Origin: Paragordius varius | Taxonomy: Eukaryota; Animalia; Nematomorpha | Reading direction: 5' to 3' | Length of the DNA: 64,000 nucleotides | Assembly: GCA_964247055.1 (NCBI GenBank) | Contig: OZ176052.1 | Location: forward strand, 6,820,001-6,884,000 | In this document: piece by piece, positions 951-64,000 of the stretch | How the letters are laid out: each line of letters opens with the position of its first letter | How positions within the stretch are numbered: the stretch's first letter is position 1 | Notes under the pieces: model-generated | What the model saw: only the letters and a program-made list of their open reading frames with translations | Told to the model about the DNA's origin: nothing | The model's database searches: none | Position numbers and translations under genes: made by a program

Positions 951-1529
951 GCATTTAAATAAAGCAATAGTGACTAATGCACCCAACTCGGGCACAATAC
1001 GTACATATGCATTGGGTCAAACCCCAAAACTGCCATTTTACTATCATCAAGATAAAAATTATAATATTATGTACTGATTGGATATTTAAGGGCAATGTTT
1101 GAAGTGAATAAGCATCACTCAGTAAGCGTAATATATAAAATTTATAGCAGGTCGCCAAACGTAAACTAGTTTATATGGAAATATACCATGTAAATGAAAA
1201 GGTAAAACTTAAATACCATTTAATAATATATTTATCTTTTGATTTAGAATCATCCATATTTAATTCGGATTTTTTGTGTGCCCTATCACCCAAAACTACG
1301 CTCACCCATCAAACGACTGATTTTATTACAAAAAAAGATATCCCTAAAGTTATTTCCGTTCAAAATAATAATGTAGATAAACATTTCATTTATTGTTGAC
1401 GTAAGCAAGCAAACACTCGCTACTAGAAATATAAACATTAGGATACCATTAAATGTAAGTGAATGTAAAAGGCTTGATCCCTTGTTAAAATGGTTACAGA
1501 CGCAACATATTAGTTTCAACGCCACACCC
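951..1529 (+). CDS. Spliced internal exons of an unidentified protein gene (ends not resolved)
   Basis: Exons 951-1070, 1091-1121, 1148-1348, 1377-1529 joined by GT-AG introns of 20 nt (1071-1090), 26 nt (1122-1147) and 28 nt (1349-1376). Each non-3n intron restores a stop-free frame: HLNKAIVTNAPNSGTIRTYALGQTPKLPFYYHQDKNYNIM-AMFEVNKHHS-QVAKRKLVYMEIYHVNEK...TTDFITKKDIPK-INISFIVDVSKQTLATRNINIRIPLNVSECKRLDPLLKWLQTQHISFNATP. Includes the frame of supplied ORF 1175..1399. An extra intron inside 1148-1348 is possible. No homology recognised. Confidence 0.55.
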
Positions 1530-2072
1530 GTAAGTGTTTTATTTGAATATGCCAATTATGCTTTTTAGTTATAAATTCAGGCGACTAAAATATATTGATT
1601 ACCAGAACATTAGTATTTTATGGCCTAAAATGCCACCTTTATAGAATTAAGAAACCGGTTAGACATTGTTTCTACCAATCTCAAATTAGATTTTATTACT
1701 ATTTAAAAAGCATTCATAAACTCGATTTTGGGCATCCTTTTTATTCGCAATTATTGAAACTGCCGTGGTAAACACTTTCCTTAAAATTACACATATTCAT
1801 TAATAAGCCTATTCAATATTACTATTAATTATATCAGATTTCGCCCGTAAAATTTTACACAAATATTACGAAAAATATTTTCCTATGATGATTATTTTTA
1901 TATATAAGCGCCCTACATTTGACTAAAAAAGTTTATGATTTTCTTCTAATTTTGTAAATATATTGACAAAGTTTATATTATGCAACTAATCAAATGTCAA
2001 GGATTTTCCCATGAATTACAAAGCCTTCAACATCTTTGTTTATAACATAAAATTTATGATTTAAATTACTAG

Positions 2073-2322
2073 AAATCTGTTACCATTAAAAAACGTGCTT
2101 TGGGTTGTATAAATTATAAAAGGAACACAAGATATGAATGGTCCATTATGACCAACATTTCATGTTTAAGTAAGCATGTTTAAATAAATACTTTAAATAA
2201 ATAAATTCCTAATAAGATATTTCCTAACCAGATATTGATATGGAAAGATTGTGCACCACAGAACTTAATGAAAAACAAGACTTAAATGGGTCTGTCTTTA
2301 GAAGCGCATTAGCAAAATGGAG
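2073..2322 (+). CDS. Two phase-matched coding exons of an unidentified gene
   Basis: Exons 2073-2169 and 2232-2322 with a 62-nt GTAAGC...CCAG intron (2170-2231), phase 1 on both sides: KSVTIKKRALGCINYKRNTRYEWSIMTNISCLN-IDMERLCTTELNEKQDLNGSVFRSALAKW. Followed by donor GTAAAT at 2323. Confidence 0.45.
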
Positions 2323-4170
2323 GTAAATCATCATTTATAGGTTGCTGTTATGTTGTGTAATAATGAAAATAACCAATTAATTAAAATTTAAATGTATTAG
2401 ATATTTGTTTAAAATTTTGGTTCATATTTATAAAGACTATTGATTTTTAGTCAATACGGTCTAGCCGCTTACGAATGCAGCATTTAGCGGTAACCTGTCT
2501 TAATACCACAAACTAAAGAAAAATTTACCACTCAATTGTATATATTTTGTAAAATATATTAATATAATATTATATACCTCAATTTACTCACTCTGGGGGG
2601 ATTGAAACATAATGACCAATACAGTCGGTTGTTCCTCATGTGTGAGAACTGAGAACTGTGATATTAAATATGTTAAGATTTTTTAATCTGATCTTTGTAG
2701 CCCAAATGTATTATTCGTCGCTTAACTCCTTCCATTGAGCCGAGCTGTAGTAAAGATTGGGTTTATTGAAGTAATTTTAAATTTTTATATGCTGTTTTCA
2801 TTGTATATTTAGGATATAGCTATAAGTCCATAGTTTGCATGTTTTCATTTTATTGAAATCAGTTTTAATGATATTCCAAAACTCACATCTGTATTCTTGG
2901 AAAAATTATTGTTCCATTTTAGACGCGTTGTGTCATCGGCACTCAAGATAATGATGGTTTCGCCTATATTGATTCTTTTAGATCTTGCGATCATTTTAGT
3001 TATGCTTGCAAATTAATACTAAATTATAATGGCGATAAAATGCATTTGGTATGATATGATACATCAGGTCTTCCTTCTTTTATTTATGTTTGCCATAATT
3101 TATCGTGATTCCCTCCCTGGGATCATTCAGAAGGCAGATAAAAATCGTTGTAAATTGTTTGGTCATTTTTCTTCTTAAGTTGAAGATTTAATTTCAACAA
3201 CTTCGATGCGCCTAAAACCAGCTTGTTTATTTGATATCAAGTTATCTGCCAATACTCTATCCTCATTTGGATCATTTATATTATTATGCTTTTGAGAGTG
3301 ATTCATTACATTCCTTTTTTGATCCGGTTTAATGCATTTATTTATGAATTAAAACGTGTTTTGTAGCCATTCATTATTAATGCACAGCGCGTTACATAGA
3401 CTTATAATGATGCTTATGGGTGCATGTTTAAGAGAATCTCCAATGGTTTTTCTGATTTGGTAAATCTAAAGGATTTTTCAATTTTTCTTTGTGTAACATT
3501 AGGTCATGATTCGTAAGAAAATTTTTATGGCTGTATATTTTTTAAATTAGTTTCTAGTGTATTCTTCCCATCTTATTTTACCCTCTGTAATTTTAAAATG
3601 CTTATAAGTTTTTAATCTTTTTATTCAATGATTATCTTGTTGCTTGGTAAATAGTTGCTTTTTAAGACATTATAAACAGCCATAACATAAAAGTCTATAT
3701 CACAGCTTGAACAATTTATTTAAAGCATTTAAAATTCACCCTTAAATATTTTAAGCTCACCATCAACATTTCAAATTACTTAAAATTTTTTAACCTTATT
3801 TAACACTTAAAACTAATATTTTAACATTTTAATGTAACACTCAAACCTAATTTTTTGGGCTAATTTGACATTTATAATATTTTATTTTTTCAATATTTAC
3901 ACTCTTTTGTTATTTTTTTAATATTATTTATATATCAAAGGTAAGGTAATATTTGTTTTTAGGTTCTTGTTTTGGTTACTTAGCCAAAATCAGGTAATTT
4001 GTTTTTAGGATTATTTTTAAATGTTCAAGGATAAAAGTGTATAAAATCAAGGGTTAGCTTAAGTGTTAAAGGGTAAAATTATGGGTGTAATATATTTTGA
4101 TATATAGATTTAGTTTTTAAGTCATCAAAAGAATATATTTTCACTTTTATAAAAATTGCGCCATCTAATC

Positions 4171-4222
4171 GTGAAACTACACACAGGGCCATAAAAAAGC
4201 ACTTTTATGGCCGCGGTTTCAC
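4171..4222. other. Stem-loop (perfect 10-bp inner stem plus 7-bp outer stem)
   Basis: GGCCATAAAA (4187-4196) / TTTTATGGCC (4203-4212) with loop AAGCAC; outer GTGAAAC (4171-4177) / GTTTCAC (4216-4222). Function unknown. Confidence 0.5.
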
Positions 4223-4302
4223 TGATTACTATGATATTTGTAGTTTTTGGAATGAAGCGTTTCGCTTTAACCCAAAAATTTTTATTTTCCATATTTTTTT
4301 AG

Positions 4303-4555
4303 GAATGTGCGCGTGATGACAGTAGAACGTCGCTTAGATAAAAATGGTGAATACATTCTAAATTTGATTGTCCATAATTTGGAGTTTTACAACTGGTTTG
4401 TGGAATGGATTTCACAATTTGGAATAAAGGTATGATTAATTTCCATATGGGCATTAAATTGATCAAAGGAAAAAAATTTAATGTATGTGAGCAAGAATGA
4501 TTTTTTTGATTTCTTGATTAAATTATACCGGTTGTCGAATTTGAACGCGAATTAA
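4303..4555 (+). CDS. Two spliced coding exons, probably the 3' part of an unidentified gene
   Basis: Poly-T acceptor, exon 4303-4429 (NVRVMTVERRLDKNGEYILNLIVHNLEFYNWFVEWISQFGIK), 39-nt intron GTATGA...CAAAG (4430-4468) that removes an in-frame TGA, then exon 4469-4555 (EKNLMYVSKNDFFDFLIKLYRLSNLNAN, TAA). Confidence 0.5.
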
Positions 4556-5162
4556 CTTAGTATATATATAGCAAAGAGAATTGATAATGGCTAATAGCAG
4601 AAAAAAACGAATTAATGAACTCTAAGCCAATAATTATCTCCTTTGCTCTTATTATTTTAAATAGTACATAAAAAATCATCCATTTAGAGTGATTCTTACC
4701 ACGGGGTTGAATTTGACTATTTTTTGTTAAATGCAAGGGAGTCGCATGGAGGAGAAGGGGTGTGCTATCACTGATTCATGCACCTGGTTCCAGTACGCCT
4801 CTGTTAGTGTACCAAAATAGGAATTCATTTAGATAATGGTTATTGGCATCTTTCCCAACAATAGAGACACAGAATAACACTGCTCAACAAGGTTTTGCAC
4901 CACCCCATTATTTTTGCATTTTCTGATACCTAATGGCATGGAAAGGCCAAAACAAAAAAGAAAATTGAGGTCACCAATAGGATTTTCCCGATATTTAATT
5001 TTTAAATTTGTATTTAATTTAAAAATAACAATCATTCCTCGTGTATATATGTTTAAATATTCAAACAAACAAGTCGATACAAGTAATATTCCATGCATGA
5101 ATAACAAAATTCTAGGCATTAATTAAGATACTAAACAAGCTAAGAGCCAAAGTATTAAAAAT

Positions 5163-5423
5163 CTAAAAGGGGCTTATGTATAGTGTGATAGATCCGGGTG
5201 GCTGCACAAGCTCTGCATATCCCCCAAGCGATCCAATTATGCCAGATATGGCAAAGATAACAATAAGTAATCGTAAAGCCCGATAAGAGAGACTTGCAAG
5301 CAAAATCCAGGCAAATTGACATGTCAAATTAACCAATTCACAGAATAAAGTTAAATAAATTCTACAATTATTGAATAAAAAGATTAGGTAAATACAAATG
5401 GTCCAATCCCATAATAGTAAATT
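5163..5423 (-). CDS. Possible hydrophobic (membrane-protein-like) exon
   Basis: 86 stop-free codons after an acceptor-like TTTTAGTAG: ...ELVNLTCQFAWILLASLSYRALRLLIVIFAISGIIGSLGGYAELVQPPGSITLYISPF. A competing minus-strand frame (ORF 4829..5119) also looks hydrophobic, so the frame is unresolved. Confidence 0.2.
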   Translation of the reverse strand, partial: NLLLWDWTICIYLIFLFNNCRIYLTLFCELVNLTCQFAWILLASLSYRALRLLIVIFAISGIIGSLGGYAELVQPPGSITLYISPF

Positions 5424-7052
5424 CTACTAAAAGTGGCTACACAACATCCATCTGAAATTAAAAATACAAAACACCAATAATTTAAAAAAATAAAGTATAT
5501 CCACTAGGTATAAATAAAGGATTTTTTTGTAAGAACCAACTCAAGAAAAAAAGCCTTATAAATACTAGAAAGAACGAAAACTAACAAAAAAAATATAGCC
5601 TATCTAAAAGCCGAAGGTTTAAACCATAGAATGCCTTTTTTAGTATTTTTTTAAAAAATTTTATACGTATTAAAAATTCACTTGAAAGAAAAAGACTAAA
5701 TTTTGACGTTTAAGTCCCTACTATTTTTTTCTCTCTGATATTTAAATGATATATTTATATTCAAAAGATAGAGTTTAAAACGCTTTATTAAATGATATTA
5801 AGTTTATAATATAATAACATTTTATTATAAAGTTATATTTAATTTTCTCTCGATTTTCTCTTGTTTTTGAAAAATTGAAAAACCTATAATATTTCAAAAT
5901 TCTGATTGGCGGGATCAAAAATTCTTTCACATTCGGTTTTAAAACACTAATCATAATTTAAAAGTTTGAGTGGTGGTGCTCAAAAATGTCCAAATTTGTC
6001 GACTAGTGTAATTTATCCATTATTATATCTGTTAATATTCTGTGATACTTTGTTAATTAAGAAAGTAATATTTTTAGTATGTTGTAAAGGACAACAGTGT
6101 TATTGTCAATACGAATCTGATGTGCCCTCAAGAATCATTTGATCAAAGAAGTTAGTTAATATTATAAATATATTTAAAATCTTATTTGATTTTATTCCAC
6201 CTAATTATTGACTATTAGTTTGCACACATATTTAAAGCGGGTACGCTTTTAATTTAAAAGAGCTTTGATTGTTGTCGTTTCCACATAAAATTATTTATTA
6301 TACAATATATTATGTTTAGAGATGATATTTTACACATCATATTACCAGCTCTGGGACGATATAATATTGCACAAATCTTTTTATATGGGCAACTTCTTTC
6401 GCAATATTACCGATTCGAGGTAAAATTATTTAATTGGGGTGATACAAAACAAATTTTATTTAAATTGAAGATATTTTTGAATAAAAGCACACGTAAATTA
6501 CTAAAAGTAAATACAAGCGTTTTTCTTATATTGATTAATATCTTTTGGGGAATATAATAATTTATAGCAAGCAATTCTAACTATTGACTGTGAGAAGATT
6601 AGCAGAGCGTTGTTTGATCTAAATTTTTACCTTTTTTTAACATCAAATATTGTCTTATCTTTGAATACTTTTATGTGTTTTTTTTAAAAATAAATTGGGA
6701 ATTATACAGCCTACAAGAAGAATAATTAAAATCAAAATGTACCAGGCAGCAAATTATAAGTATTATGGCCCTATGATTAAAGGCATGGTAAAACATTTGA
6801 AAATTATATCATATATATTTATTTCAGCATTTTAACGAACTTCTTTCATTATGAGTATTGGTTAAAGTTAAAGCATTGTTTTTTTATGTTTCGAATATGG
6901 CTTAAATACTGATTAGCTATAAACGTATTTTATTTTATTATTTATTTTTATCCTATGTGCCGTTCGACCCCCATTTTTTCAGATTCTGATTTCCTATTAA
7001 TCTATTTCTTTTGCCGCAAAAATGATGTCAAATTTTTAAGTCCTATATCATT

Positions 7053-8368
7053 CGATAGGTAACTTTAAGATCAATATTGAAACAATAAATACCAGAAAAA
7101 ATGATTTTTATCTAGCTCAAAGTCAAAAATCGCATTATATCGCTATAAAAGCAAATACAATAAAAAACGCGCCTACTAAATTTTAATTTTGTCTAACCTA
7201 ATGTGTAATTAAATGCTTTTAATACCATAATTAACTCTTTTTATTGTATTTTAACCGCATTTACATTTTGATTTCACTATTATGAAGCATTTGGCTATCG
7301 ATATATGATGATTAACATTTATTTTTGCGTATCAGGTTTGTTTAACCTACTATGATATAAAAATATTTATCTAAACTTTCTACTAAAAAAACCAGCGTAT
7401 TTGTAAATATTTAATGTTATTGATTAATTAATTTATAGATTAAAGGAATTAAGACTCACCATTCCAAAGTATATGCCCTTTGATCGATTTTTCGTTAATT
7501 TAACCAAACTCAAGGATCCATTACAGATTTGGAAGGAATTGGAAGATAATACTAATTTAACTGTTCAGGCAAAAGTAAAAATTAAAAATTACTTTTAGGT
7601 TTATAAAACGACTCAGTTATCCTATAATTGTCCGAATAAGTTAACAATAAATGCCAATGATTATGTTAAAAAGGGCATGGAAGTTAAGTGTTTTCTTTCT
7701 GAAAATCCACCAAGCTCCATTTACTTGTCCCTTATGATAGAATATACGAAAGGTATGCTTATATTATCAATTAATTATTTGTTAATAGCTAATGAGGCCG
7801 TTGTATAACTTGAGGGTACGCGGCAAAAATCAATATTATGGCAATGTAATTTGTGCAATAAAATTTTTAAACATCGATGCAAAAAAATCGTGAAAAGAAT
7901 AAAAATAGGTAAAATAATGAAATAGTTTATAAACTTTTAATTATATACTGCTTTTTAGCATTATTGAATGCCCTAAATCACACCTTCTTCACAAATAATA
8001 AAAAATTACTATTGGAGAAAAGAGTGATTTTGTTTCTTGTTATGTATAATCATAGTAGAAATATTTTAAATCTAAATTTTATATAATTTTTAATATTTAC
8101 CACATAAATACTATAATAAATCCATATATGTTACGTTAAAAAAATTAGCTTTGCAAAAAGTTATGTTTTATAACAATCAGGTCTAATTTATGAAACTATA
8201 AAATCCTAATAAAAAATAAAGATACTCATTTGTGTACATATTATCATAAAAGTTAACTTAGTTTCCTTATTTATTATTTGTACGCAAAAATGCGATTTTT
8301 TGATTTAGGCTGAAAAAAATGAAACCAGTATTTGAACCATATTTATTGTTTAAATGTCTAGCTATCGT
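7053..8368. repeat. Degenerate inverted repeat pair (~80 bp arms at ~7053-7136 and ~8289-8368)
   Basis: ATTTTTATCTAGCTCAAAGTCAAAAATCGCATT (to 7136) aligns with the reverse complement of AATGCGATTTTTTGATTTAGGCTGAAAAAAAT (from 8289). Both arms also share AAACAATAAATA and CGATAG in inverted orientation. Confidence 0.4.
7439..7752 (+). CDS. Two spliced coding exons of an unidentified gene
   Basis: Exon 7439-7574 (LKELRLTIPKYMPFDRFFVNLTKLKDPLQIWKELEDNTNLTVQAK), 24-nt intron GTAAAA...TTTTAG (7575-7598) whose terminal TAG would otherwise be an in-frame stop, exon 7599-7752 (VYKTTQLSYNCPNKLTINANDYVKKGMEVKCFLSENPPSSIYLSLMIEYTK), donor GTATGC at 7753. Confidence 0.6.
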
Positions 8369-8477
8369 ACATTTTATATATCTTGTCTCAGTGTTTATAA
8401 GGGCAGCAAATAATTTGCAGAAATAAATGAATGCAAACCCTCTGCTTTATAAATGTTATATAAATACTTTATTATAG

Positions 8478-8712
8478 AGTTGGAAGTGGCTGAGGATATA
8501 TGTAAACAAGCTGGTGATTATAATAATTTGGGACAAATATTTATAAATACTTTTGAAAAGTTTATCATTCATTATAATTTTTTAGGGTTCCGAATGATTC
8601 ACAGATTGAATTAAAGCAGGATGACAATGGAAACATTAATATATGGGTTAATCGGAATGTAAAAGATTGGCTTAATCAATATTCATTGTACCCCAAAAAA
8701 TATTCAGTATAA
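8478..8712 (+). CDS. Two spliced coding exons (may continue the 7439-7908 gene)
   Basis: Exon 8478-8559, 26-nt intron (8560-8585), exon from 8586 to TAA at 8710-8712: LEVAEDICKQAGDYNNLGQIFINTFEK-VPNDSQIELKQDDNGNINIWVNRNVKDWLNQYSLYPKKYSV. Phase-1 entry matches the donors at 7753 and 7909. Confidence 0.6.
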
Positions 8713-8803
8713 TATATAGTTATTTTCAATAACTCATTATGGCGTTTCTTAAAAAAATACCGCCGTCTGCGTAAGTTATGAAAACACGTTTAAATGTATC
8801 TAG

Positions 8804-9427
8804 GCTGACTTATATATAAATTTTATGATATGGCACAGGTATTTTGGAGTTTACTCATTCAAAAATATATTATTGTTTAGAGGAGCTGCACCCATGACAC
8901 AGATGATATGAATTTTAGTGGTTTAACTACTCTTAATCGCGACACTAATGAAGTAGTCTATAGTTGTATAATTATAGGCTTCAAAAAATCATTGTAAACA
9001 ATGGAAACTTACTCTTGGACACTGCAAAGGTAAGCGTATGGGATTTATTTAATATAGAAATAACGGAAAACGAAACAAAAATAAAAGATGAACGCTTTAA
9101 AAATCAATTTTTGGAAACATTTGTCTTGTTAGAGGATAAATGGATACAAAACCTTTTGTTTAACATAAAATTTATTGGCCAAGTTTGTTTGACTTAATGA
9201 GTATTAGTTAGAAATATCAGCTAAAATCAATGGTACCGTAGAAATAGCTTTTGCTCGATATCACTCAATCAAGCACATGCATTTCCATTTTGAGGTATAA
9301 TCAATCTCTTATTAATTTAAAATTACGGTTCTAATATGATACTATTTTAATCTAAAATTTTTATGTTGCAATATATTTTAAATATTATTTACATATTATT
9401 AATATTCGTTATCAGGATACAAATTAA
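8804..9427 (+). CDS. Multi-exon coding segment with consecutive tiny introns, product unknown
   Basis: Exons 8804-8848, 8881-8952, 8978-9029, 9058-9182, 9208-9294, 9416-9427; introns of 32, 25, 28, 25 and 121 nt, all GT-AG and phase-consistent: ADLYINFMIWHRYFG-RSCTHDTDDMNFSGLTTLNRDTNE-ASKNHCKQWKLTLGHCK-EITENETKIKDERFKNQFLETFVLLEDKWIQNLLFNIKFIGQ-LEISAKINGTVEIAFARYHSIKHMHFHFE-DTN(TAA). The fourth exon is the frame of supplied ORF 8964..9197. Confidence 0.65.
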
Positions 9428-10907: not shown

Positions 10908-11117
10908 TTAAGTTACTTACTAGTTTTAGCGTTGAACTACAATTTTTATTGTTGCATTCTCAATATTTGGTGGTAAAATGATTTCAAACATATTCATTTT
11001 GACCATAATATATTATTTGCGAAAAGTGTCCTTGAAAACTTCAATTTGGTCTTTGACACATTGGGTTAGTGCTTAAACATTTTAAATTGATCCTTAAAAT
11101 TTTTAAATTTGGATTAG

Positions 11118-12170
11118 TCTAGAGAGTTTCAGAAAATACATGTGTTTTATTGATTACAGACAAGCCTTCGATTCGATTAATTATGACTCCTTGTGGGAAA
11201 CATTAAAGTTAGTAGGGGTATCGTCCCACTTAATAAGATTGATTAGCTCTCTCTATGTAAAACAAAGCGCGATCATAAGAATCAGCGGGGGACACAGAAG
11301 AAATACCTATCTTGAAAGGAGTCAGACAAGGGTGTTGCTTATCCCTTATCTGTTCAATATGTGCACAGAAATGATAATGAGGAAGTTAGATGGTAAATCA
11401 ATAATTTAAGGTTTGCAGACGATACCTACTCTTATAGCTGAAAATGTAAATGATTTAAAGGAATTGATCGAAGAGATTCGAAAGGAAAGTTTGAGGTATG
11501 GTCTTATGCTTAACCCTAACAAAACCAAAATATTATGTACTGGAGGAAAGGCTACAATTATTATAGAGGGCGTAGAAATAGAAGTAGTTAAACAGTTAAC
11601 GTTTTTAGGTGCAGTAATTTCAGAGGATGGGTCTTCAACTCCTGACATCAGAAAGAGAATAAGATTGGGTAAAGAAGCGATGACCAAACTAATAAAGATT
11701 TGGAAAAACAAAAGCGTAGGAATTGAAACTAAAAAAAGATTGCTCTACTGTTTTGTTTTCCCGGTCACCACAGATGGTTGTGAGAGCTGGACTCTCAGAA
11801 AAAGGGACAAAGACTCATGGCTTTCGAAAGGAGCAGCTGGCGTGATGCTAGGATACACCTGGAAGGATAAAATTAAGAATGGAAATCTAACTAGAGAAAT
11901 AAAGCCTAAAACAAACATCCTTGAGATAATTCTAAAAAGAAAGTTAACATATTTTGGTCATGTCATGCGATCGAATTCTCTAGGGAAGATACAATGTTTG
12001 GGAAGGTAGAAGGACAAAGGAAACGAGGCCGACCACCGATGAGGTGGTTGGATATGATAAAGGAGGAGACTAAAATGACATTGAACTATCTCAATCTAGC
12101 GTAAAAGATAGAAGAAAGTGGAAAGAAATAGTAAAAACTATATCCAAAAAATCGTTTACGACTTAGGAAT
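11118..12170 (+). mobile_element. 5'-truncated, frameshifted RTE-clade non-LTR retrotransposon (reverse transcriptase and C-terminal region), pseudogenised
   Basis: RT motifs across shifting frames: SREFQK / MCFIDYRQAFDSI (11118-11180), GVRQGCCLS(P)YLFN (from 11318), NLRFADDT (11403-11426), YGLMLNPNKTKIL, FTFLG-like QLTFLGAVISEDGSSTPDIRKRIRLGK, GCESWTL, LTYFGHVMR, and the RTE-type terminus GKVEGQRKRGRPPMRWLD (12000-12053). At least six indels break the frame. No endonuclease domain present. Confidence 0.9.
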
Positions 12171-12180
12171 AACGAACCAA

Positions 12181-15100
12181 TTATTAATATTTTGGTCTTT
12201 CCAACAATAACCCAAGTATTTATAAATATCAAATAATATTTGTAACAATCTTTTTATGTCACCATTTATATTTAATTATTCCCAACAATCACCCAAATAT
12301 TAACAATCATTTTATATCACCCATTAATATTTATTTATTCTCAACAATCAACCATATATTTCTACCAATTATTTTATATCACTCATTAATATTTTAGTCT
12401 TTCCAACAATCAACCGAATATTTATAACAATCAAAAACTATTTGCAACAATCATTTTAGGTCACCATTAAAATTTAATTATTCCCAACAATCAACCATAT
12501 ATTTAAAAAAATCAATTTATATCACCCATTTTATATTTTAGTCTTTCCAACAATAAACCAACTATTTATAACAATCAAATAATATTAGCAACAATCCTTT
12601 TATGTCACCATTTATATTTAATTATTCCCAACAATCAACCATATATTTTTAGCAATCAATTTGTATTACCCATTAATATTTTAGTCTGTCCAACAATCAT
12701 CCAAAAATTTATAACAATCAAATAATATTTGCAACAATCATTTTATGTCACCATTAATATTTAATTATTTCCAACAATCCACCATATATTTCCAACAATT
12801 AATTTATTTCACCCATTAATACTTTAGTCTTTACAATAATCACCCAAATATTTATAAAAATAAAATAATATTTGCAACAATCATTTTATGTCACCATTAA
12901 TATTTAATTATTTCCAACAATCAACCATATATTTCCAACAATTAATTTATATCACCCATTAATATTTTAGTTTTTCTAACAATCACACAAATATTTATAA
13001 CAATCAAATAATATTTGCAATGATATTTTATATCACCCATTATTATATAATTATTCTTAACAATCAAACATATATTTGCAACAATCATTTTGTATTACCC
13101 ATTAATATTTTAGTCTTTCTAACAATCAACCAAATATTTATAACAATCAAATAATATTTGCAACAATCATTTTATGCACCCATTAATATTTAATTATTCC
13201 AACAATCAACCATATATTTGCAACAATCAATTTATATTAACCATTAATATTATACTCTTATCAACAATCAACCAAATATTAATAACAATCAAATAATATT
13301 CAATCATTTTATGCACCCATTAATATTTCATTATTCCAACAATCAACCATATATTTGCAACAATCAATTTGTATTACCCATTAATATTTAAGTCTTTCCA
13401 ACAATCAACCAAATATTTATAACAATCAACCAAATATTTGCAACAATCAATTTGTATTAACCATTAATATTATACTCTTACCAACAATCAACCAAATATT
13501 AATAACAATCAAATAATATTCAATCATTTTATGCACCCATTAATATTTCATTATTCCAACAATCAACCATATATTTTCAACAATCAATTTGGATTACCCA
13601 TTAATATTATACTCTTACCAACAATCAACCAAATATTTATAACAATCAAATAATATTTGCAACAATCATTTTATGCACCCATTAATATTTAATTATTCCA
13701 ACAATCAACCATATATTTGCAACAATCAATTTATATTAACCATTAATATTATACTCTTACCAACAATCAACCAAATATTAATAACAATCAAATAATATTC
13801 AATCATTTTATGCACCCATTAATATTTCATTATTCCAACAATCAACCATATATTTTCAACAATCAATTTGGATTACCCATTAATATTATACTCTTACCAA
13901 CAATCAACCAAATATTTATAACAATCAAATAATATTTGCAACAATCATTTTATGCACCCATTAATATTTAATTATTCCAACAATCAACCATATATTTGCA
14001 ACAATCAATTTATATTAACCATTAATATTATACTCTTACCAACAATCAATCAAATATTTATAACAATCAAACAAATATTTGCAACAATCATTTTATGCAC
14101 CCATTAATATTTAATTATTCCAACAATCAACCATATATTTGCAATAATCAATTTATATTAACCATTAATATTATACTCTTACCAACAATCACCCATATAT
14201 TTATAACAATCAAATAATATTTTCAACAATCATTTTATGCACCCATTAATATTTAATTATTCCAACATTCAACCATATATTTGCAACAATCAATTTATAT
14301 TAACCATTAATATTATACTCGTACCAACAATCACCCATATATTTATAACAATCAAATAATATTTGCAACAATCATTTTATGCACCCATTAATATTTAATT
14401 ATTCCAACATTCGACCATATATTTGCAACAATCAATTTGTATTATCCATTAATATTTTAGTCTTTCCAACAATCAATCAAATATTTATAACAATCAAATA
14501 ATATTTGCAACAATCATTTTATGCACCCATTAATATTTAATTATTCCAACAATCAACCATATATTTGCAACAATCAATTTGTATTACCCATTAATATTTT
14601 ACTCTTTCCAACAATCCTCAAATATTTATAACAATCAAATAATATTTGCAACAATCATTTTATGCACCCATTAATATTTAATTATTCCAACAATCAACCA
14701 TATATTTGCAACAATCAATTTGTATTACCCATTAATATTTTAGTCTTTCCAACAATCAACCAAATATTTATAACAATCAAATAATATTTGCAACAATCAT
14801 TTTATGCACCCATTAATATTTAATTATTCCAACAATCAACCATATATTTGCAATAATCAATTTGTATTACCCATTAATATTTTAGTCTTTCCAACAATCA
14901 CCCATATATTTATGACAATTAAATAATATTTGCAACAATCATTTTATGCACCCATTAATATTTAATTATTCCAACAATCAACCATATATTTGCAACAATT
15001 AATTTATTTCACCCAATAATATTTTAGTCTTTCCAACAATCACCCAAATATTTAAACAATAAAATAATATTTGCAACAATCATTTTATGTCAACATTAAT

Positions 15101-18100
15101 ATTTAATTAATCCAACAATCAACCATATATTTACAACAATCAATTTGAATTACCAATTAATATTATACTCTTTCCAACAATCCTCAAATATTTATAACAA
15201 TCAAATAATATTTGCAACAATCATTTTATGTCACCCATTAATAACAATTATGCCAAAAATCAACCATATATTTTCAACAATCAATTTGTATTACCCATTA
15301 ATATTTTAGTCTTTCCAACAATCACCCAAATATTTATAACAATAAAATAATATTTGCAACAATCATTTTATGTCAACATTAATATTTAATTAATCCAACA
15401 ATCAACCATATATTTACAACAATCAATTTGAATTACCAATTAATATTATACTCTTTCCAACAATCCTCAAATATTTATAACAATCAAATAATATTTGCAA
15501 CAATCATTTTATGTCACCCATTAATAACAATTATGCCAAAAATCAACCATATATTTTCAACAATCAATTTGTATTACCCATTAATATTTTGGCCTTTAAA
15601 ACAATCAACCAAGTATTTGTTATAAACAAATAATATTTTATACAATCATTTTATATCTCCCATTAATATTAAATTATTCAAACAAACAACCAAATATTTA
15701 TCACAATCAAATAATATTTGCAACAATCATTTTATGCACCCATTAATATTTAATTATTCCAACAATCAACCATATATTTGCAATAATCAATTTGTATTAC
15801 CCATTAATATTTTAGTCTTTCCAACAATCAACCAAATATTTATAACAATTAATATTTGCAACAATCATTTTATGTCAACATTAATATTTAATTAATCCAA
15901 CAATCAACCATATATTTACAACAATCAATTTGAATTACCAATTAATATTATACTCTTTCCAACAATCCTCAAATATTTATAACAATCAAATAATATTTGC
16001 AACAATCATTTTATGCACCCATTAATATTTAATTATTCCAACAATCAACCATATATTTGCAACAATTAATTTATTTCACCCATTAATATTTTAGTCTTTC
16101 CAACAATCACCCAAATATTTATAACAATAAAATAATATTTGCAACAATCATTTTATGTCAACATTAATATTTAATTAATCCAACAATCAACCATATATTT
16201 ACAACAATCAATTTGAATTACCAATTAATATTATACTCTTTCCAACAATCCTCAAATATTTATAACAATCAAATAATATTTGCAACAATCATTTTATGTC
16301 ACCCATTAATAACAATTATGCCAAAAATCAACCATATATTTTCAACAATCAATTTGTATTACCCATTAATATTTTGGCCTTTAAAACAATCAACCAAGTA
16401 TTTGTTATAAACAAATAATATTTTATACAATCATTTTATATCTCCCATTAATATTAAATTATTCAAACAAACAACCAAATATTTATCACAATCAAATAAT
16501 ATTTGCAACAATCATTTTATGCACCCATTAATATTTAATTATTCCAACAATCAACCATATATTTGCAACAATTAATTTATTTCACCCAATAATATTTTAG
16601 TCTTTCCAACAATCACCCAAATATTTATAACAATAAAATAATATTTGCAACAATCATTTTATGTCAACATTAATATTTAATTAATCCAACAATCAACCAT
16701 ATATTTACAACAATCAATTTGAATTACCAATTAATATTATACTCTTTCCTACAATCCTCAAATATTTATAACAATCAAATAATATTTGCAACAATCATTT
16801 TATGTCACCCATTAATAACAATTATGCCAAAAATCAACCATATATTTTCAACAATCAATTTGTATTACCCATTAATATTTTAGTCTTTCCAACAATCACC
16901 CAAATATTTATAACAATAAAATAATATTTGCAACAATCATTTTATGTCAACATTAATATTTAATTAATCCAACAATCAACCATATATTTACAACAATCAA
17001 TTTGAATTACCAATTAATATTATACTCTTTCCAACAATCCTCAAATATTTATAACAATCAAATAATATTTGCAACAATCATTTTATGTCACCCATTAATA
17101 ACAATTATGCCAAAAATCAACCATATATTTTCAACAATCAATTTGTATTACCCATTAATATTTTGGCCTTTAAAACAATCAACCAAGTATTTGTTATAAA
17201 CAAATAATATTTTATACAATCATTTTATATCTCCCATTAATATTAAATTATTCAAACAAACAACCAAATATTAATAACAATCAAATAATATTCAATCATT
17301 TTATGCACCCATTAATATTTCATTATTCCAACAATCAACCATATATTTGCAACAATCAATTTGTATTACCCATTAATATTTAAGTCTTTCCAACAATCAA
17401 CCAAATATTTATAACAATCAACCAAATATTTGCAACAATCAATTTGTATTAACCATTAATATTATACTCTTACCAACAATCAACCAAATATTAATAACAA
17501 TCAAATAATATTCAATCATTTTATGCACCCATTAATATTTCATTATTCCAACAATCAACCATATATTTTCAACAATCATTTTATGTCAACATTAATATTT
17601 AATTAATCCAACAATCAACCATATATTTACAACAATCAATTTGAATTACCAATTAATATTATACTCTTTCCAACAATCCTCAAATATTTATAACAATCAA
17701 ATAATATTTGCAACAATCATTTTATGTCACCCATTAATAACAATTATGCCAAAAATCAACCATATATTTTCAACAATCAATTTGTATTACCCATTAATAT
17801 TTTGGCCTTTAAAACAATCAACCAAGTATTTGTTATAAACAAATAATATTTTATACAATCATTTTATATCTCCCATTAATATTAAATTATTCAAACAAAC
17901 AACCAAATATTAATAACAATCAAATAATATTCAATCATTTTATGCACCCATTAATATTTCATTATTCCAACAATCAACCATATATTTTCAACAATCAATT
18001 TGGATTACCCATTAATATTATACTCTTACCAACAATCAACCAAATATTTATAACAATCAAATAATATTTGCAACAATCATTTTATGCACCCATTAATATT

Positions 18101-21100
18101 TAATTATTCCAACAATCAACCATATATTTGCAACAATCAATTTATATTAACCATTAATATTATACTCTTACCAACAATCAACCAAATATTAATAACAATC
18201 AAATAATATTCAATCATTTTATGCACCCATTAATATTTCATTATTCCAACAATCAACCATATATTTTCAACAATCAATTTGGATTACCCATTAATATTAT
18301 ACTCTTACCAACAATCAACCAAATATTTATAACAATCAAATAATATTTGCAACAATCATTTTATGCACCCATTAATATTTAATTATTCCAACAATCAACC
18401 ATATATTTGCAACAATCAATTTATATTAACCATTAATATTATACTCTTACCAACAATCAATCAAATATTTATAACAATCAAACAAATATTTGCAACAATC
18501 ATTTTATGCACCCATTAATATTTAATTATTCCAACAATCAACCATATATTTGCAATAATCAATTTATATTAACCATTAATATTATACTCTTACCAACAAT
18601 CACCCATATATTTATAACAATCAAATAATATTTTCAACAATCATTTTATGCACCCATTAATATTTAATTATTCCAACATTCAACCATATATTTGCAACAA
18701 TCAATTTATATTAACCATTAATATTATACTCGTACCAACAATCACCCATATATTTATAACAATCAAATAATATTTGCAACAATCATTTTATGCACCCATT
18801 AATATTTAATTATTCCAACATTCGACCATATATTTGCAACAATCAATTTGTATTATCCATTAATATTTTAGTCTTTCCAACAATCAATCAAATATTTATA
18901 ACAATCAAATAATATTTGCAACAATCATTTTATGCACCCATTAATATTTAATTATTCCAACAATCAACCATATATTTGCAACAATCAATTTGTATTACCC
19001 ATTAATATTTTACTCTTTCCAACAATCCTCAAATATTTATAACAATCAAATAATATTTGCAACAATCATTTTATGCACCCATTAATATTTAATTATTCCA
19101 ACAATCAACCATATATTTGCAACAATCAATTTGTATTACCCATTAATATTTTAGTCTTTCCAACAATCAACCAAATATTTATAACAATCAAATAATATTT
19201 GCAACAATCATTTTATGCACCCATTAATATTTAATTATTCCAACAATCAACCATATATTTGCAATAATCAATTTGTATTACCCATTAATATTTTAGTCTT
19301 TCCAACAATCACCCATATATTTATGACAATTAAATAATATTTGCAACAATCATTTTATGCACCCATTAATATTTAATTATTCCAACAATCAACCATATAT
19401 TTGCAACAATTAATTTATTTCACCCAATAATATTTTAGTCTTTCCAACAATCACCCAAATATTTATAACAATAAAATAATATTTGCAACAATCATTTTAT
19501 GTCAACATTAATATTTAATTAATCCAACAATCAACCATATATTTACAACAATCAATTTGAATTACCAATTAATATTATACTCTTTCCAACAATCCTCAAA
19601 TATTTATAACAATCAAATAATATTTGCAACAATCATTTTATGTCACCCATTAATAACAATTATGCCAAAAATCAACCATATATTTTCAACAATCAATTTG
19701 TATTACCCATTAATATTTTAGTCTTTCCAACAATCACCCAAATATTTATAACAATAAAATAATATTTGCAACAATCATTTTATGTCAACATTAATATTTA
19801 ATTAATCCAACAATCAACCATATATTTACAACAATCAATTTGAATTACCAATTAATATTATACTCTTTCCAACAATCCTCAAATATTTATAACAATCAAA
19901 TAATATTTGCAACAATCATTTTATGTCACCCATTAATAACAATTATGCCAAAAATCAACCATATATTTTCAACAATCAATTTGTATTACCCATTAATATT
20001 TTGGCCTTTAAAACAATCAACCAAGTATTTGTTATAAACAAATAATATTTTATACAATCATTTTATATCTCCCATTAATATTAAATTATTCAAACAAACA
20101 ACCAAATATTTATCACAATCAAATAATATTTGCAACAATCATTTTATGCACCCATTAATATTTAATTATTCCAACAATCAACCATATATTTGCAATAATC
20201 AATTTGTATTACCCATTAATATTTTAGTCTTTCCAACAATCAACCAAATATTTATAACAATTAATATTTGCAACAATCATTTTATGTCAACATTAATATT
20301 TAATTAATCCAACAATCAACCATATATTTACAACAATCAATTTGAATTACCAATTAATATTATACTCTTTCCAACAATCCTCAAATATTTATAACAATCA
20401 AATAATATTTGCAACAATCATTTTATGCACCCATTAATATTTAATTATTCCAACAATCAACCATATATTTGCAACAATTAATTTATTTCACCCATTAATA
20501 TTTTAGTCTTTCCAACAATCACCCAAATATTTATAACAATAAAATAATATTTGCAACAATCATTTTATGTCAACATTAATATTTAATTAATCCAACAATC
20601 AACCATATATTTACAACAATCAATTTGAATTACCAATTAATATTATACTCTTTCCAACAATCCTCAAATATTTATAACAATCAAATAATATTTGCAACAA
20701 TCATTTTATGTCACCCATTAATAACAATTATGCCAAAAATCAACCATATATTTTCAACAATCAATTTGTATTACCCATTAATATTTTGGCCTTTAAAACA
20801 ATCAACCAAGTATTTGTTATAAACAAATAATATTTTATACAATCATTTTATATCTCCCATTAATATTAAATTATTCAAACAAACAACCAAATATTTATCA
20901 CAATCAAATAATATTTGCAACAATCATTTTATGCACCCATTAATATTTAATTATTCCAACAATCAACCATATATTTGCAACAATTAATTTATTTCACCCA
21001 ATAATATTTTAGTCTTTCCAACAATCACCCAAATATTTATAACAATAAAATAATATTTGCAACAATCATTTTATGTCAACATTAATATTTAATTAATCCA

Positions 21101-24100
21101 ACAATCAACCATATATTTACAACAATCAATTTGAATTACCAATTAATATTATACTCTTTCCAACAATCCTCAAATATTTATAACAATCAAATAATATTTG
21201 CAACAATCATTTTATGTCACCCATTAATAACAATTATGCCAAAAATCAACCATATATTTTCAACAATCAATTTGTATTACCCATTAATATTTTGGCCTTT
21301 AAAACAATCAACCAAGTATTTGTTATAAACAAATAATATTTTATACAATCATTTTATATCTCCCATTAATATTAAATTATTCAAACAAACAACCAAATAT
21401 TTATCACAATCAAATAATATTTGCAACAATCATTTTATGCACCCATTAATATTTAATTATTCCAACAATCAACCATATATTTGCAATAATCAATTTGTAT
21501 TACCCATTAATATTTTAGTCTTTCCAACAATCAACCAAATATTTATAACAATTAATATTTTCAACAATCATTTTATGTCAACATTAATATTTAATTAATC
21601 CAACAATCAACCATATATTTACAACAATCAATTTGAATTACCAATTAATATTATACTCTTTCCAACAATCCTCAAATATTTATAACAATCAAATAATATT
21701 TGCAACAATCATTTTATGCACCCATTAATATTTAATTATTCCAACAATCAACCATATATTTGCAACAATTAATTTATTTCACCCATTAATATTTTAGTCT
21801 TTCCAACAATCACCCAAATATTTATAACAATAAAATAATATTTGCAACAATCATTTTATGTCAACATTAATATTTAATTAATCCAACAATCAACCATATA
21901 TTTACAACAATCAATTTGAATTACCAATTAATATTATACTCTTTCCAACAATCCTCAAATATTTATAACAATCAAATAATATTTGCAACAATCATTTTAT
22001 GTCACCCATTAATAACAATTATGCCAAAAATCAACCATATATTTTCAACAATCAATTTGTATTACCCATTAATATTTTGGCCTTTAAAACAATCAACCAA
22101 GTATTTGTTATAAACAAATAATATTTTATACAATCATTTTATATCTCCCATTAATATTAAATTATTCAAACAAACAACCAAATATTTATCACAATCAAAT
22201 AATATTTGCAACAATCATTTTATGCACCCATTAATATTAAATTAGTCCAACAATCAACCAAATATTTCTAACAATAAAATAATATTTGCAACAATCATTT
22301 TATGTCACCCATTAATATTTAATCATTACAACAATAAACCATATATTTGCAACAATCAACTTGTATTACCCATTAATATTTTAGTCTTTCCAACAATCAA
22401 CCAAATATTTATAACAATCAAATAATATGTGCAACAATCATTTTATGTCATTCATTAATATTTAATTATTCCAACAATGAACCATATATTTGCAACAATC
22501 AACTTGTATTACCCATTAATATTTTAGTCTTTCCAACAATCAACCAAATATTTATAACAATCAAATATTATGTGCAACAATCATTTTATGTCACCCATTA
22601 ATATTAAATTAGTCCAACAATCAACCAAATATTTCTAACAATAAAATAATATTTGCAACAATCATTTTATGTCACCCATTAATATTTAATCATTACAACA
22701 ATAAACCATATATTTGCAACAATCAACTTGTATTAACCATTAATATTTTAGTCTTTACAACAATGACCAAATATTTATAACAATCAAATAATATGTGCAA
22801 CAATCATTTTATGTCACCCATTAATATTTAATCATTACAACAATAAACCATATATTTGCAACAATCATTTTATTTCACCCATTAATATTTAATCATTACA
22901 ACAATAAACCATATATTTGCAACAATCAACTTGTATTACCCATTAATATTTTAGTCTTTCCAACAATCAACCAAATATTTATAACAATCAAATATTATGT
23001 GCAACAATCATTTTATGTCACCCATTAATATTAAATTAGTCCAACAATCAACCAAATATTTCTAACAATAAAATAATATTTGCAACAATCATTTTATGTC
23101 ACCCATTAATATTTAATCATTACAACAATAAACCATATATTTGCAACAATCAACTTGTATTAACCATTAATATTTTAGTCTTTACAACAATGACCAAATA
23201 TTTATAACAATCAAATAATATGTGCAACAATCATTTTATGTCACCCATTAATATTTAATCATTACAACAATAAACCATATATTTGCAACAATCATTTTAT
23301 TTCACCCATTAATATTTAATCATTACAACAATAAACCATATATTTGCAACAATCAACTTGTATTACCCATTAATATTTTAGTCTTTCCAACAATCAACCA
23401 AATATTTATAACAATCAAATAATATGTGCAACAATCATTTTATGTCATCCATTAATATTTAATTATCTCAACAATAAACCATATATTTGTAACAATCAAC
23501 TTGTATTACCCATTAATATTTTAGTCTTTCCAACAATCAACCAAATATTTATAACAATCAAATATTATGTGCAACAATCATTTTATGTCACCCATTAATA
23601 TTTAATCATTACAACAAACTATATATTTGCAACAATCAACTTGTATTACCCATTAATATTTTAATCTTTCCAACAATCAACCAAATATTAATAACAATCA
23701 AACAATATTTGCAACAATCATTTTATGTCACCCATTAATATTCCAACAATCAACCATATATTTGGAACAATCAATTTGTATTACCCATTAATATTTTAGT
23801 CTTTCCAACAATCAACCAAATATTAATAACAATCAAATAATATTAGCAACAATCATTTTATGTCACCCATTAATATTTAATTATTCCAACAATCAACCAT
23901 ATATTTGGAACAATCAATTTGTATTACCCATTAATATTTTAGTTTTTCCAACAATCAACCAAATATTAATAACAATGATATAATATTTGCTACAATCATT
24001 TTATGTCACCCATTAATATTTAATCTTTACAACAATAAACTATATATTTGCAACAATCAACTTGTATTACCCATTAATATTTTAATCTTTCCAACAATCA

Positions 24101-63900: not shown

Positions 63901-64000
63901 TATTTTAGTCTTTTCAACAATCAACCATATATATTCAACAATCAAATTATATCACCATTAATATTTTAGTATTTCCAACAATCAACCATATATTTTCAAC
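27941..64000. repeat. Satellite domain II: 61-62-bp monomers with higher-order repeats; runs off the window
   Basis: Consensus about CCATTAATATTTTAGTCTTTCCAACAATCAACCATATATTTTCAACAATCAA plus a variable ~10-nt segment (ATTATATCAC, TATGTATTAC, ATTCAATCAC, TATCTATTAC and others). Successive copies shift 1-2 nt per 60-nt line, giving 61-62 bp. No non-satellite interruption seen. Confidence 0.97.

What the first reader, a model, noticed from the sequence alone, without database searches (positions are those of the whole stretch)
951..9427. Genes built with tiny (20-39 nt) spliceosomal introns
Seen: thirteen candidate GT-AG introns of 20, 26, 28, 62, 39, 24, 36, 26, 32, 25, 28, 25 and 121 nt. Eleven are 39 nt or shorter. 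At 8849-9207 four in a row each hand the frame to a stop-free, acidic/protein-like exon. Known: introns this short are far below the usual animal/plant minimum and typify a few lineages (Paramecium, dicyemid mesozoans, some reduced parasites, nucleomorphs). Inference: this is such a compact-intron genome, yet it also carries RTE and piggyBac elements and a >50-kb satellite. That is an unusual mix of miniaturised genes and expanded repeats.
Basis: partly seen in the sequence, partly recalled or inferred. Interest (0 to 1): 0.75.

Follow-up and report, generated by a model that had tools for sequence, protein, structure and literature searches.

The report
Tiny introns: three supported, most unproven
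This AT-rich animal genome really does cut out introns of only about 22-26 bases, but only three or four of the thirteen proposed here stand above chance, and the genes they sit in match no known protein.

Summary
Partly confirmed. GT-AG pairs of all thirteen stated lengths exist in 951-9427, and the four-in-a-row chain at 8849-9207 is stop-free. Frame logic alone is not evidence: random sequences of the same composition always gave chains of 4-10 such "introns".

A coding-potential test separates the candidates.
- Supported junctions: 1349-1376 (28 nt, with 19- and 37-nt alternatives), 7575-7598 (24 nt) and 8560-8585 (26 nt).
- Marginal: 9183-9207 (25 nt).
- The other nine look like chance pairs or have equally good rivals. 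Examples are a 174-nt intron 8707-8880 instead of the 32-nt one, and a 74-nt intron instead of the 25- and 28-nt pair.

The exons are single copy. They matched nothing in Pfam or PDB. The two longest stop-free stretches also matched nothing in the word-indexed protein search, and one of them found only junk among 1.84 billion representatives. No RNA data were reachable.

Micro-introns are real elsewhere in this genome. Pfam profile continuity shows them in REEP-like (22 nt) and Fcf1 (25 nt) genes, and less exactly in an RRM gene (23 nt). All three start GTT. Six of eleven Ras-family junctions imply 19-26 nt.

This is not a compact-intron genome. Ordinary introns of 46-1,500 nt coexist with the tiny ones, some apparently carrying transposon insertions. 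The scan has already noted this micro-intron class many times elsewhere in the same genome.

The parts
1148..1529 (+). Putative coding region G1. Two stop-free stretches, 1148-1348 and 1377-1529 (118 codons when joined), ending at a canonical GTAAGT donor at 1530.
   Evidence: Coding scores are +8.5 and +7.5 bits in the + frames, and every other frame is negative. Stop-free when joined. Single copy. No Pfam hit.
1349..1376 (+). Supported micro-intron candidate, 28 nt, GTT donor and TAG acceptor. Alternatives for the same junction are 1358-1376 (19 nt) and 1373-1409 (37 nt).
   Evidence: Minimum flank coding score is 8.4; no pair reached 7 or more in 300 kb of simulated sequence. The unbiased scan also lists the alternatives. 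Interior GC is 0.25 against 0.33 in the flanks.
4873..6016 (.). Dispersed repeat of 1.14 kb, with at least 40 copies at 92-97% identity. It lies between putative exons, so it is probably intronic or intergenic.
7439..7574 (+). Exon B1 of putative gene B. It follows the acceptor TTTATAG at 7438 and holds a possible ATG at 7473.
   Evidence: Coding score +8.2 bits; all other frames contain stops. Single copy.
7575..7598 (+). Supported micro-intron, 24 nt, GTAAAA...TTTTAG. Its own TAG is the only in-frame stop between B1 and B2. Alternative donor at 7563 (36 nt).
   Evidence: Flank scores 8.2 and 8.9. Chosen by every dynamic-programming parse. Interior GC 0.12 against 0.30 in the flanks.
7599..7752 (+). 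Exon B2.
   Evidence: Coding score +9.5 bits. Single copy with no paralogue. No homologue in the word-indexed search.
7753..8477 (+). Probable ordinary intron of 725 nt (GTATGC...TATTATAG) joining B2 to B3 in frame.
   Evidence: Frame-compatible and stop-free when joined. The 36-nt segment is a multiple of 3, has no in-frame stop, and leads to a stop after 5 codons.
8478..8559 (+). Exon B3.
   Evidence: Coding score +8.3 bits in the proposed frame.
8560..8585 (+). Best-supported micro-intron, 26 nt, GTTTAT...TTTTTTAG. It shifts the frame between B3 and B4.
   Evidence: Flank scores 9.5 and 9.9. Interior GC 0.15 against 0.28 in the flanks. Retained in the parses that traverse this junction. GTT donor, as in the verified micro-introns.
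8586..8706 (+). Exon B4.
   Evidence: Coding score about +9 bits. Single copy.
8707..8880 (+). Probable ordinary intron of 174 nt (GTATAA...TTGTTTAG) joining B4 to B5 in frame.
Evidence: Preferred by the parse at penalties 3, 5 and 7.
8881..8952 (+). Exon B5.
   Evidence: Coding score +8.4 to +8.9 bits over 24 codons; GC 0.39 for the 8881-8955 version of the exon.
8953..9057 (+). Unresolved stretch.
   Evidence: Both routes are stop-free. The parse prefers the 74-nt route. Exon B6 scores only +1.8 to +2.2, and the read-through frame 8964-9194 is open and scores about +7.
9058..9182 (+). Exon B7, the core of the 77-codon open stretch 8964-9194.
   Evidence: Coding score +4.5 bits. No paralogue. 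No real homologue among 1.84 billion representatives.
9183..9207 (+). Marginally supported micro-intron, 25 nt, GTTTGT...TATTAG, with a TTAAT box 10 nt from the 3' end.
   Evidence: Flank scores 8.6 and 4.7; chance expectation is 0.4-1.7 per 8.5 kb. Used by the only parse that extends past 9182, at penalty 3.
9208..9294 (+). Exon B8.
   Evidence: Coding score +3.6 bits.
9295..9415 (+). It cannot be evaluated.
   Evidence: The downstream exon is too short to score.
11107..12006 (+). Frameshifted reverse-transcriptase fragment of a retrotransposon remnant. Its frameshifts mimic micro-intron junctions in my test.
   Evidence: Weak RVT_1 hits below Pfam's cut-off. Pseudo-junctions appear at 11385-11988, with GC-rich interiors for three of the four.
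12228..64000 (.). Satellite array with units of 62, 81 and 142 nt and strong strand asymmetry.

Best explanation
The interval holds one or two single-copy, lineage-restricted protein-coding genes on the + strand.
- G1 is about 1148-1529.
- Gene B is about 7439-9294 or 7439-9427, some 270-280 codons.

Their exons are joined by two kinds of GT-AG intron.
- Micro-introns of about 24-28 nt: 1349-1376 or a neighbouring alternative, 7575-7598, 8560-8585 and probably 9183-9207.
- Ordinary introns: 7753-8477 (725 nt) and 8707-8880 (174 nt).

The micro-introns belong to a genome-wide class of about 19-26 nt that is AT-rich and often starts GTT. They are presumably removed by the ordinary U2-type spliceosome through intron definition, with a branch A a few bases from the 3' AG.

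Shown: the sequence anatomy, the coding-potential statistics, and the reality of the class in conserved genes elsewhere in this genome. Inferred: that these particular segments are removed from RNA, and the splicing mechanism.

The remaining nine candidates are chance GT-AG pairs, or mis-paired real splice sites. For example, the real acceptor at 8880 and the real donors at 1530, 4430 and 7753 may have been paired with the wrong partner.
For: Coding signal on the + strand:
- Exons B1-B5 each score +8 to +9.5 bits (7-14 per 40 codons). The median is 7.1 for known long ORFs and 0.6 for stop-free random segments, whose 95th percentile is 5.9.
- The best frame-linked chain on the + strand scores 42.6. 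The maximum over 40 simulations is 20.2, and the - strand scores 17.1.

Junction test:
- Only three loci in 1-12,200 outside the retrotransposon remnant pass a minimum flank score of 6.
- The simulated rate at a score of 7 or more is zero in 300 kb.
- The intron interiors are AT-rich (GC 0.12-0.25 against 0.28-0.33 in the flanks), like the verified introns and unlike the retrotransposon frameshifts.

Micro-introns shown elsewhere in the genome:
- TB2_DP1_HVA22 profile positions 51|52 span a 22-nt segment.
- Fcf1 profile positions 22|split codon|24 span a 25-nt segment.
- An RRM_1 domain resumes at profile position 32 after a 23-nt segment.
- Six of eleven adjacent Ras-family exon matches imply 19-26 nt.

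The joined models are stop-free over 269-279 codons.
Against: - No homologue for any exon. Pfam and PDB found nothing. The two longest stop-free stretches found nothing in the word-indexed search. One of them found only a junk repeat translation among 1.84 billion representatives.
- So no junction could be checked against a conserved protein.
- No RNA data were reachable.
- Each supported junction could equally be a frameshift or nonsense change in a decaying gene, or an assembly indel. The reading frames overlap at 1377-1396 and 8578-8611, and the retrotransposon remnant produces similar junctions.
- A high-scoring false junction was found inside a real homeobox exon.
- With a stricter intron penalty the gene-B chain is only marginally above the null: 17.5 against a 95th percentile of 14.1 and a maximum of 28.8.
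- The coding model was trained on only about 50 long ORFs from one 180-kb region.
Confidence: 0.55

Rival explanations
1. Decaying unitary pseudogene, or assembly indels. The open stretches are remnants of one former gene, and the three "junctions" are frameshift or nonsense lesions that happen to be bracketed by GT and AG.
For: - Reading frames overlap at two junctions, so a 1-2-nt indel would fuse them.
- The third junction is a single in-frame TAG.
- The retrotransposon remnant at 11.1-12.0 kb gives four comparable pseudo-junctions.
- A suitable GT-AG pair is nearly always available by chance.
- The locus sits beside a 50-kb satellite and transposon debris.
Against: - The interiors are much more AT-rich than the flanks and end in T-rich tracts plus AG, like verified introns. 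Three of the four retrotransposon pseudo-junctions are instead GC-rich.
- Lengths of 24-28 nt lie in or near the verified 19-26-nt class.
- The coding signal is undiminished across five exons.
Confidence: 0.2
2. No gene at all. The interval is non-coding DNA near a satellite, and all thirteen segments are chance GT-AG pairs in AT-rich sequence.
For: - Chains of 4-10 such "introns" arise in every random sequence.
- Stop-free runs of 70-100 codons are expected a few times per 12 kb at this composition, by my own estimate, and several were seen.
- No homologue and no paralogue.
- The protein-language-model recognition value for exon B2 is below that of typical known proteins.
Against: - Five consecutive frame-compatible segments on one strand each score in the range of real exons.
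- The + strand chain scores 42.6 against a null maximum of 20.2 and 17.1 on the - strand.
- Exon-level searches are weak in this genome: a true Fcf1 exon, and the probable next exon of the same gene, missed PDB entirely.
Confidence: 0.17
3. All thirteen segments are real introns and the genes are built almost wholly from introns of 20-39 nt with micro-exons.
For: The chain 8825-9427 and the extended model 7439-9427 are stop-free and end at a TAA. Every boundary is GT-AG.
Against: - Nine candidates have flank scores at chance level.
- The 36-nt segment is not needed for the frame and leads to a stop after 5 codons.
- The 39-nt candidates lead to exons of 5 codons or fewer, or to non-coding-like sequence.
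- The 8-codon first exon scores negative, and a 174-nt intron using the same acceptor joins two strong exons.
- Lengths of 32-39 nt fall in the gap between the two size classes inferred from Ras genes (small sample).
Confidence: 0.03

Closest known systems
Ultra-short introns of myxobolid myxozoans (Henneguya salminicola median 27 bp; Thelohanellus kitauei and Myxobolus rasmusseni 22 bp). Hadjez et al. 2026, PMC13644364.
   Same: Animal GT-AG introns well under 30 nt, AT-rich, with little room for a polypyrimidine tract and a presumed branch A close to the 3' AG. Standard annotation tends to miss them.
   Different: - In myxobolids tiny introns are the norm (the median intron) and the 5' site is reduced to GTa.
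- Here they are one of two size classes beside introns of 46 nt to over 1 kb.
- The three verified by homology start GTT.
- This genome also has many myosin loci and a cadherin-like gene, and its size and GC (110.6 Mb, about 27% GC) differ from the H. salminicola assembly (74.9 Mb, 29% GC).
Dicyema japonicum short introns (mean 38 bp, 67.5-Mb genome, 36.7% GC, 49% repeats). Lu et al. 2019, PMC6736024.
   Different: In Dicyema short introns are genome-wide, not a minority class. The reported 5' signal is GTa.
Paramecium introns of about 25 nt (10.1101/2021.08.05.455221; PMC5014332).
   Same: Similar length, and recognition presumably by intron definition.
   Different: Paramecium is a ciliate with a reassigned genetic code and a somatic genome nearly free of repeats. 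Here conserved genes read in the standard code and the organism is an animal.

Membership tests
Ultra-short U2-type (GT-AG) spliceosomal introns | GT at the 5' end and AG at the 3' end | tested here: met
   All thirteen candidates have them. The feature is non-specific: about 29 such pairs of 20-39 nt occur per kb per strand in simulated sequence.
Ultra-short U2-type (GT-AG) spliceosomal introns | Removal restores a reading frame that matches a conserved protein across the junction | tested here: inconclusive
   No homologue exists for any exon in the window. The feature is met for introns elsewhere in the genome: REEP-like 22 nt, Fcf1 25 nt and, less exactly, RRM 23 nt.
Ultra-short U2-type (GT-AG) spliceosomal introns | Both flanks are coding and both reading frames end near the junction | tested here: met
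   Met for 1349-1376, 7575-7598 and 8560-8585. Marginal for 9183-9207. Not met for the other nine.
Ultra-short U2-type (GT-AG) spliceosomal introns | The segment is absent from mature mRNA | not testable with these tools
Word-indexed searches found no transcript-derived fragments.
Ultra-short U2-type (GT-AG) spliceosomal introns | Length within the genome's own micro-intron class (about 19-26 nt) | tested here: met
   The 24, 25, 25, 26 and 26-nt candidates fit. The 28-nt ones are borderline. The 32, 36 and 39-nt ones fall in the gap between the classes inferred from Ras-family junctions, which were 19-26 and 46-71 nt with n=11.
Compact-intron genome (Paramecium, dicyemid or myxobolid type: the typical intron is under 40 nt) | The majority or median of introns is tiny | tested here: not met
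   - Myosin gene: introns of about 60-130 nt.
- Homeobox gene: intron of about 88 nt.
- Cadherin-like gene: modelled introns of 94-1,530 nt.
- Five of eleven Ras junctions are 46-71 nt.
- No 20-30-nt peak appears in pattern or ORF-rescue counts over 212 kb.
Compact-intron genome (Paramecium, dicyemid or myxobolid type: the typical intron is under 40 nt) | Ciliate-type genetic code, as for Paramecium | tested here: not met
   Conserved domains (myosin head, Ras, Fcf1, RRM, homeodomain) read in the standard code. Some Ras genes show no internal stops over 160 profile positions.

The most novel reading that the evidence does not exclude
An animal outside Myxozoa and Dicyemida has a discrete class of 19-28-nt spliceosomal introns. 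Many have a T at intron position +3 (GTT), which mismatches the canonical U1 pairing. They coexist with ordinary GTA-type introns in a repeat- and satellite-rich 110-Mb genome. Lineage-restricted genes beside a 50-kb satellite, such as gene B here, use both classes in one transcript. That would point to a second mode of 5' splice-site recognition tied to intron length.
Probability: 0.4. Interest if true: 0.75.

Novelty: new variant of a known kind. Interest (0 to 1): 0.42.

Why it matters
A September 2026 paper (PMC13644364) states that introns under 30 bp are known in only two animal lineages, both parasites in which tiny introns are the rule. A genome in which a 19-26-nt class sits beside ordinary introns, apparently with its own GTT donor, would differ from both. 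It would test how a spliceosome chooses between two intron types and what the minimum intron size is. In practice, gene finders with a minimum intron length of 30-40 nt would break many genes in this genome. This window adds little to that case: its genes have no homologues and no RNA support, and most of the listed introns do not stand up. Its main use is as a caution that frame logic alone over-calls tiny introns in AT-rich DNA.

Tried and rejected
Homology searches that found nothing for the window's exons:
- Pfam on 20 stop-free stretches. PDB sequence search on four exons.
- Word-indexed protein search on two stretches.
- Full HMMER search of 1.84 billion representatives with 8964-9194. 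The only hit was a translated tandem repeat.
- ESM Atlas look-alikes for exon B2: phage hypothetical proteins, uninformative.
- Own-genome paralogue searches for five exons: self-hits, plus one chance-level match (E 0.15).

Approaches that proved too weak or too noisy:
- Codon-usage score alone was too weak, so I replaced it with a 3-periodic Markov model.
- ORF-rescue counts and donor-to-acceptor distance histograms over 212 kb showed no 20-30-nt peak. The sample is too small and too noisy.
- Self-training gene finding merged neighbouring genes into one chain.
- The paralogue pair L017/L019 with a 26-nt candidate comes from too recent a duplication to be informative.
- PDB search on a true Fcf1 exon and the probable next exon failed, which shows how weak exon-level searches are here.

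Organism identity:
- 18S copies were found but could not be compared with any reference.
- A homeobox query returned only a mite homeodomain hit.
- The hairworm attribution in earlier notes is therefore untested here.

Limits met:
- The ciliate reading was rejected (standard genetic code, animal genes).
Joined models were only checked for stop codons in a script.


Full report
CONTEXT. The window is G000:C3:6820001-6884000 of a 110.6-Mb assembly in 44 contigs. GC is about 26%.
- Bases 12,228-64,000 are a satellite with units of 62, 81 and 142 nt and a GC skew near -0.76.
- A frameshifted reverse-transcriptase fragment lies at 11,107-12,006.
- A 1.14-kb repeat with at least 40 copies at 92-97% identity lies at 4873-6016.
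- Short dispersed repeats lie at 4649-4793 and 7228-7326.
- The rest of 951-9427 is single copy at DNA level. The five exons tested are single copy at protein level.
- The 20 kb upstream holds a cadherin-like gene on the + strand, with DxNDN motifs in several exons and one weak Cadherin hit. It also holds a hAT remnant and a reverse-transcriptase-like ORF (by eye; no Pfam hit).
- The organism is an animal that uses the standard genetic code. I could not identify it further. Earlier notes of this scan call it a hairworm relative, which I did not test.

THE OBSERVATION. GT-AG pairs of all thirteen stated lengths exist.
- I could place most of them: 1122-1147 (26), 1349-1376 (28), 7575-7598 (24), 7753-7788 (36), 8560-8585 (26), 8849-8880 (32), 8953-8977 (25), 9030-9057 (28), 9183-9207 (25) and 9295-9415 (121).
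- The 20-, 62- and 39-nt ones have several possible sites.
- The four-in-a-row chain is stop-free and ends at a TAA at 9425-9427.

IS IT MORE THAN CHANCE? By frame logic, no. I ran a dynamic programme that looks for chains of GT-AG segments of 20-39 nt joining stop-free exons of at least 24 nt.
- It found 4-10 in a row in each of 40 random sequences of the same length and second-order composition.
- In the real interval the longest such chains lie elsewhere, at 6675-7151 on + and 987-1501 on -.
- At this composition a stop-free exon of 20-40 codons is cheap.

A BETTER TEST. I trained a 3-periodic second-order Markov coding model on 53 long ORFs from a 180-kb stretch of contig 1.
- In cross-validation, 40-codon pieces of real ORFs score a median of 7.1 bits. 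Stop-free random segments score 0.6, with a 95th percentile of 5.9.
- For each GT-AG pair I took the weaker of the two flank scores.
- In 300 kb of simulated sequence no pair of 20-39 nt reached 7. About 0.4 per 8.5 kb reach 5, and about 7 reach 3.
- 9183-9207 is marginal (4.7). All the others score 3.3 or less.
- An unbiased scan of 1-12,200 on both strands finds exactly these three junction loci plus pseudo-junctions inside the retrotransposon remnant, and nothing on the - strand.
- At the three loci both reading frames end close to the junction. The interiors are AT-rich (GC 0.12-0.25 against 0.28-0.33 in the flanks), as in verified introns. Three of the four retrotransposon pseudo-junctions are instead GC-rich.

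GENE MODELS. Exons B1-B5 (7439-7574, 7599-7752, 8478-8559, 8586-8706, 8881-8952) each score +8 to +9.5 bits in one frame, and almost every other frame of each contains stops.
- They link in frame through the 24-nt intron, a 725-nt intron (7753-8477), the 26-nt intron and a 174-nt intron (8707-8880).
- From B5 onward two routes are stop-free. The other is a 74-nt intron (8956-9029) followed by the 25-nt intron at 9183. The scoring slightly prefers the second.
Its upstream 8-codon exon scores negative.
- The 36-nt segment is a multiple of three without a stop and runs into a stop five codons later. Its donor more likely belongs to the 725-nt intron.
- The best frame-linked chain on the + strand scores 42.6. 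The null maximum is 20.2, and the - strand scores 17.1. With a stricter intron penalty the margin is slim (17.5 against a 95th percentile of 14.1).
- G1 (1148-1348 plus 1377-1529) behaves similarly, with scores of +8.5 and +7.5. It ends at a canonical GTAAGT donor whose 39-nt partner leads nowhere.

HOMOLOGY. No exon hits Pfam or PDB.
- The two longest stop-free stretches hit nothing in the word-indexed database.
- The 77-codon stretch 8964-9194 found only a translated tandem repeat among 1.84 billion representatives.
- This does not show that the DNA is non-coding. A genuine Fcf1 exon of this genome, and the probable next exon of the same gene, also miss PDB.

ARE MICRO-INTRONS REAL IN THIS GENOME? 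Yes.
- In a REEP-like gene the TB2_DP1_HVA22 profile runs to position 51 at the last residue of one exon. It resumes at position 52 at the first residue of the next, 22 nt later (L006:3567-3588).
- In the neighbouring Fcf1 gene the profile runs 1-22, then a split codon, then position 24 onward across 25 nt (L006:2813-2837, - strand).
- An RRM domain resumes at profile position 32 after 23 nt (L008:1365-1387).
- All three start GTT. The ordinary introns I saw start GTA. A paralogue pair has a 26-nt GTAA candidate, so the rule is not absolute.
- Coordinates of adjacent Ras-family exon matches imply six junctions of 19-26 nt and five of 46-71 nt, with none between.
- Ordinary introns are common: a myosin gene at about 60-130 nt, a homeobox gene at about 88 nt, and the cadherin-like gene at 94-1,530 nt. 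So this is a two-class genome, not a compact one.

RIVALS. A frameshifted unitary pseudogene or assembly indels would give the same junction statistics. The retrotransposon remnant shows this, and I also found one high-scoring false junction inside a real homeobox exon. Composition and length favour introns, but only RNA can settle it.

LITERATURE. Introns under 30 bp are published for myxobolid myxozoans and Dicyema only, with a reduced GTa donor (PMC13644364; PMC6736024). This genome's size, GC, gene content and two-class pattern do not fit what those papers report.

EARLIER NOTES. Earlier notes of this scan describe the same micro-intron class, and the GTT donor, in many other windows of this genome. 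This finding is therefore a further and comparatively weak instance.

VERDICT. Three junctions are probably real micro-introns, one is possible, and nine are unsupported.

Noticed in passing
L006:3567-3588(+), L006:2813-2837(-), L008:1365-1387(+): The three micro-introns supported by Pfam profile continuity (22, 25 and 23 nt) all start GTT. Ordinary introns seen in the same data start GTA. A T at intron position +3 is unusual for U1 pairing.
   Followed up: partly
window 4873-6016: A 1.14-kb dispersed repeat with at least 40 copies at 92-97% identity on many contigs, so a young element. By eye the ends look like imperfect inverted repeats (CACT.../...AGTG), but the gapless repeat tool did not confirm this.
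   Followed up: partly
window 4649-4793 and 7228-7326: Two short dispersed repeats of about 145 and 100 nt, with dozens of copies at 74-88% identity, possibly SINE or MITE fragments.
   Followed up: no
window 12228-64000: The satellite changes character. Up to about 27.8 kb it has mixed 62, 81 and 142-nt units at 70-85% match. From 27,794 it is a homogeneous 62-nt unit at 85-87% match. Strand asymmetry is extreme (GC skew -0.76).
   Followed up: no
L024:3400-10100 and L025:5211-5366 (the 20 kb upstream of the window): A cadherin-like gene on the + strand with DxNDN motifs in several exons and a likely transmembrane exon. A hAT dimerisation-domain remnant (L025:2938-3165) and a reverse-transcriptase-like ORF (by eye; no Pfam hit) lie in the long gaps between its putative exons. 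G1 in the window could be its cytoplasmic tail.
   Followed up: partly
L008:8354-9085(+): A 244-codon open exon with a beta-eliminating lyase (tryptophanase-type) domain, which I would not have expected in an animal genome.
   Followed up: no
G000:C2:1811658-1995730: An rDNA array with at least 12 18S copies on the - strand, spaced about 9-46 kb apart, so irregularly rather than as a uniform tandem array.
   Followed up: no
G000:C10:1742396-1742872 and G000:C11:1307111-1307587: Two Ras-family hits with identical length, score and E-value on different contigs. They may be a duplicated segment or uncollapsed haplotigs.
   Followed up: no
G000:C5:5361143-5361730(+): A Ras-family gene whose four exon matches abut within 1-4 nt with overlapping profile positions. 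This implies three consecutive micro-introns of about 19-22 nt.
   Followed up: partly
L007:756-1796(-): A homeobox gene with the classic intron at homeodomain position 46/47, here about 88 nt with a GTAAAA donor. A high-scoring false micro-intron candidate lies inside its long first exon and is a useful negative control.
   Followed up: yes
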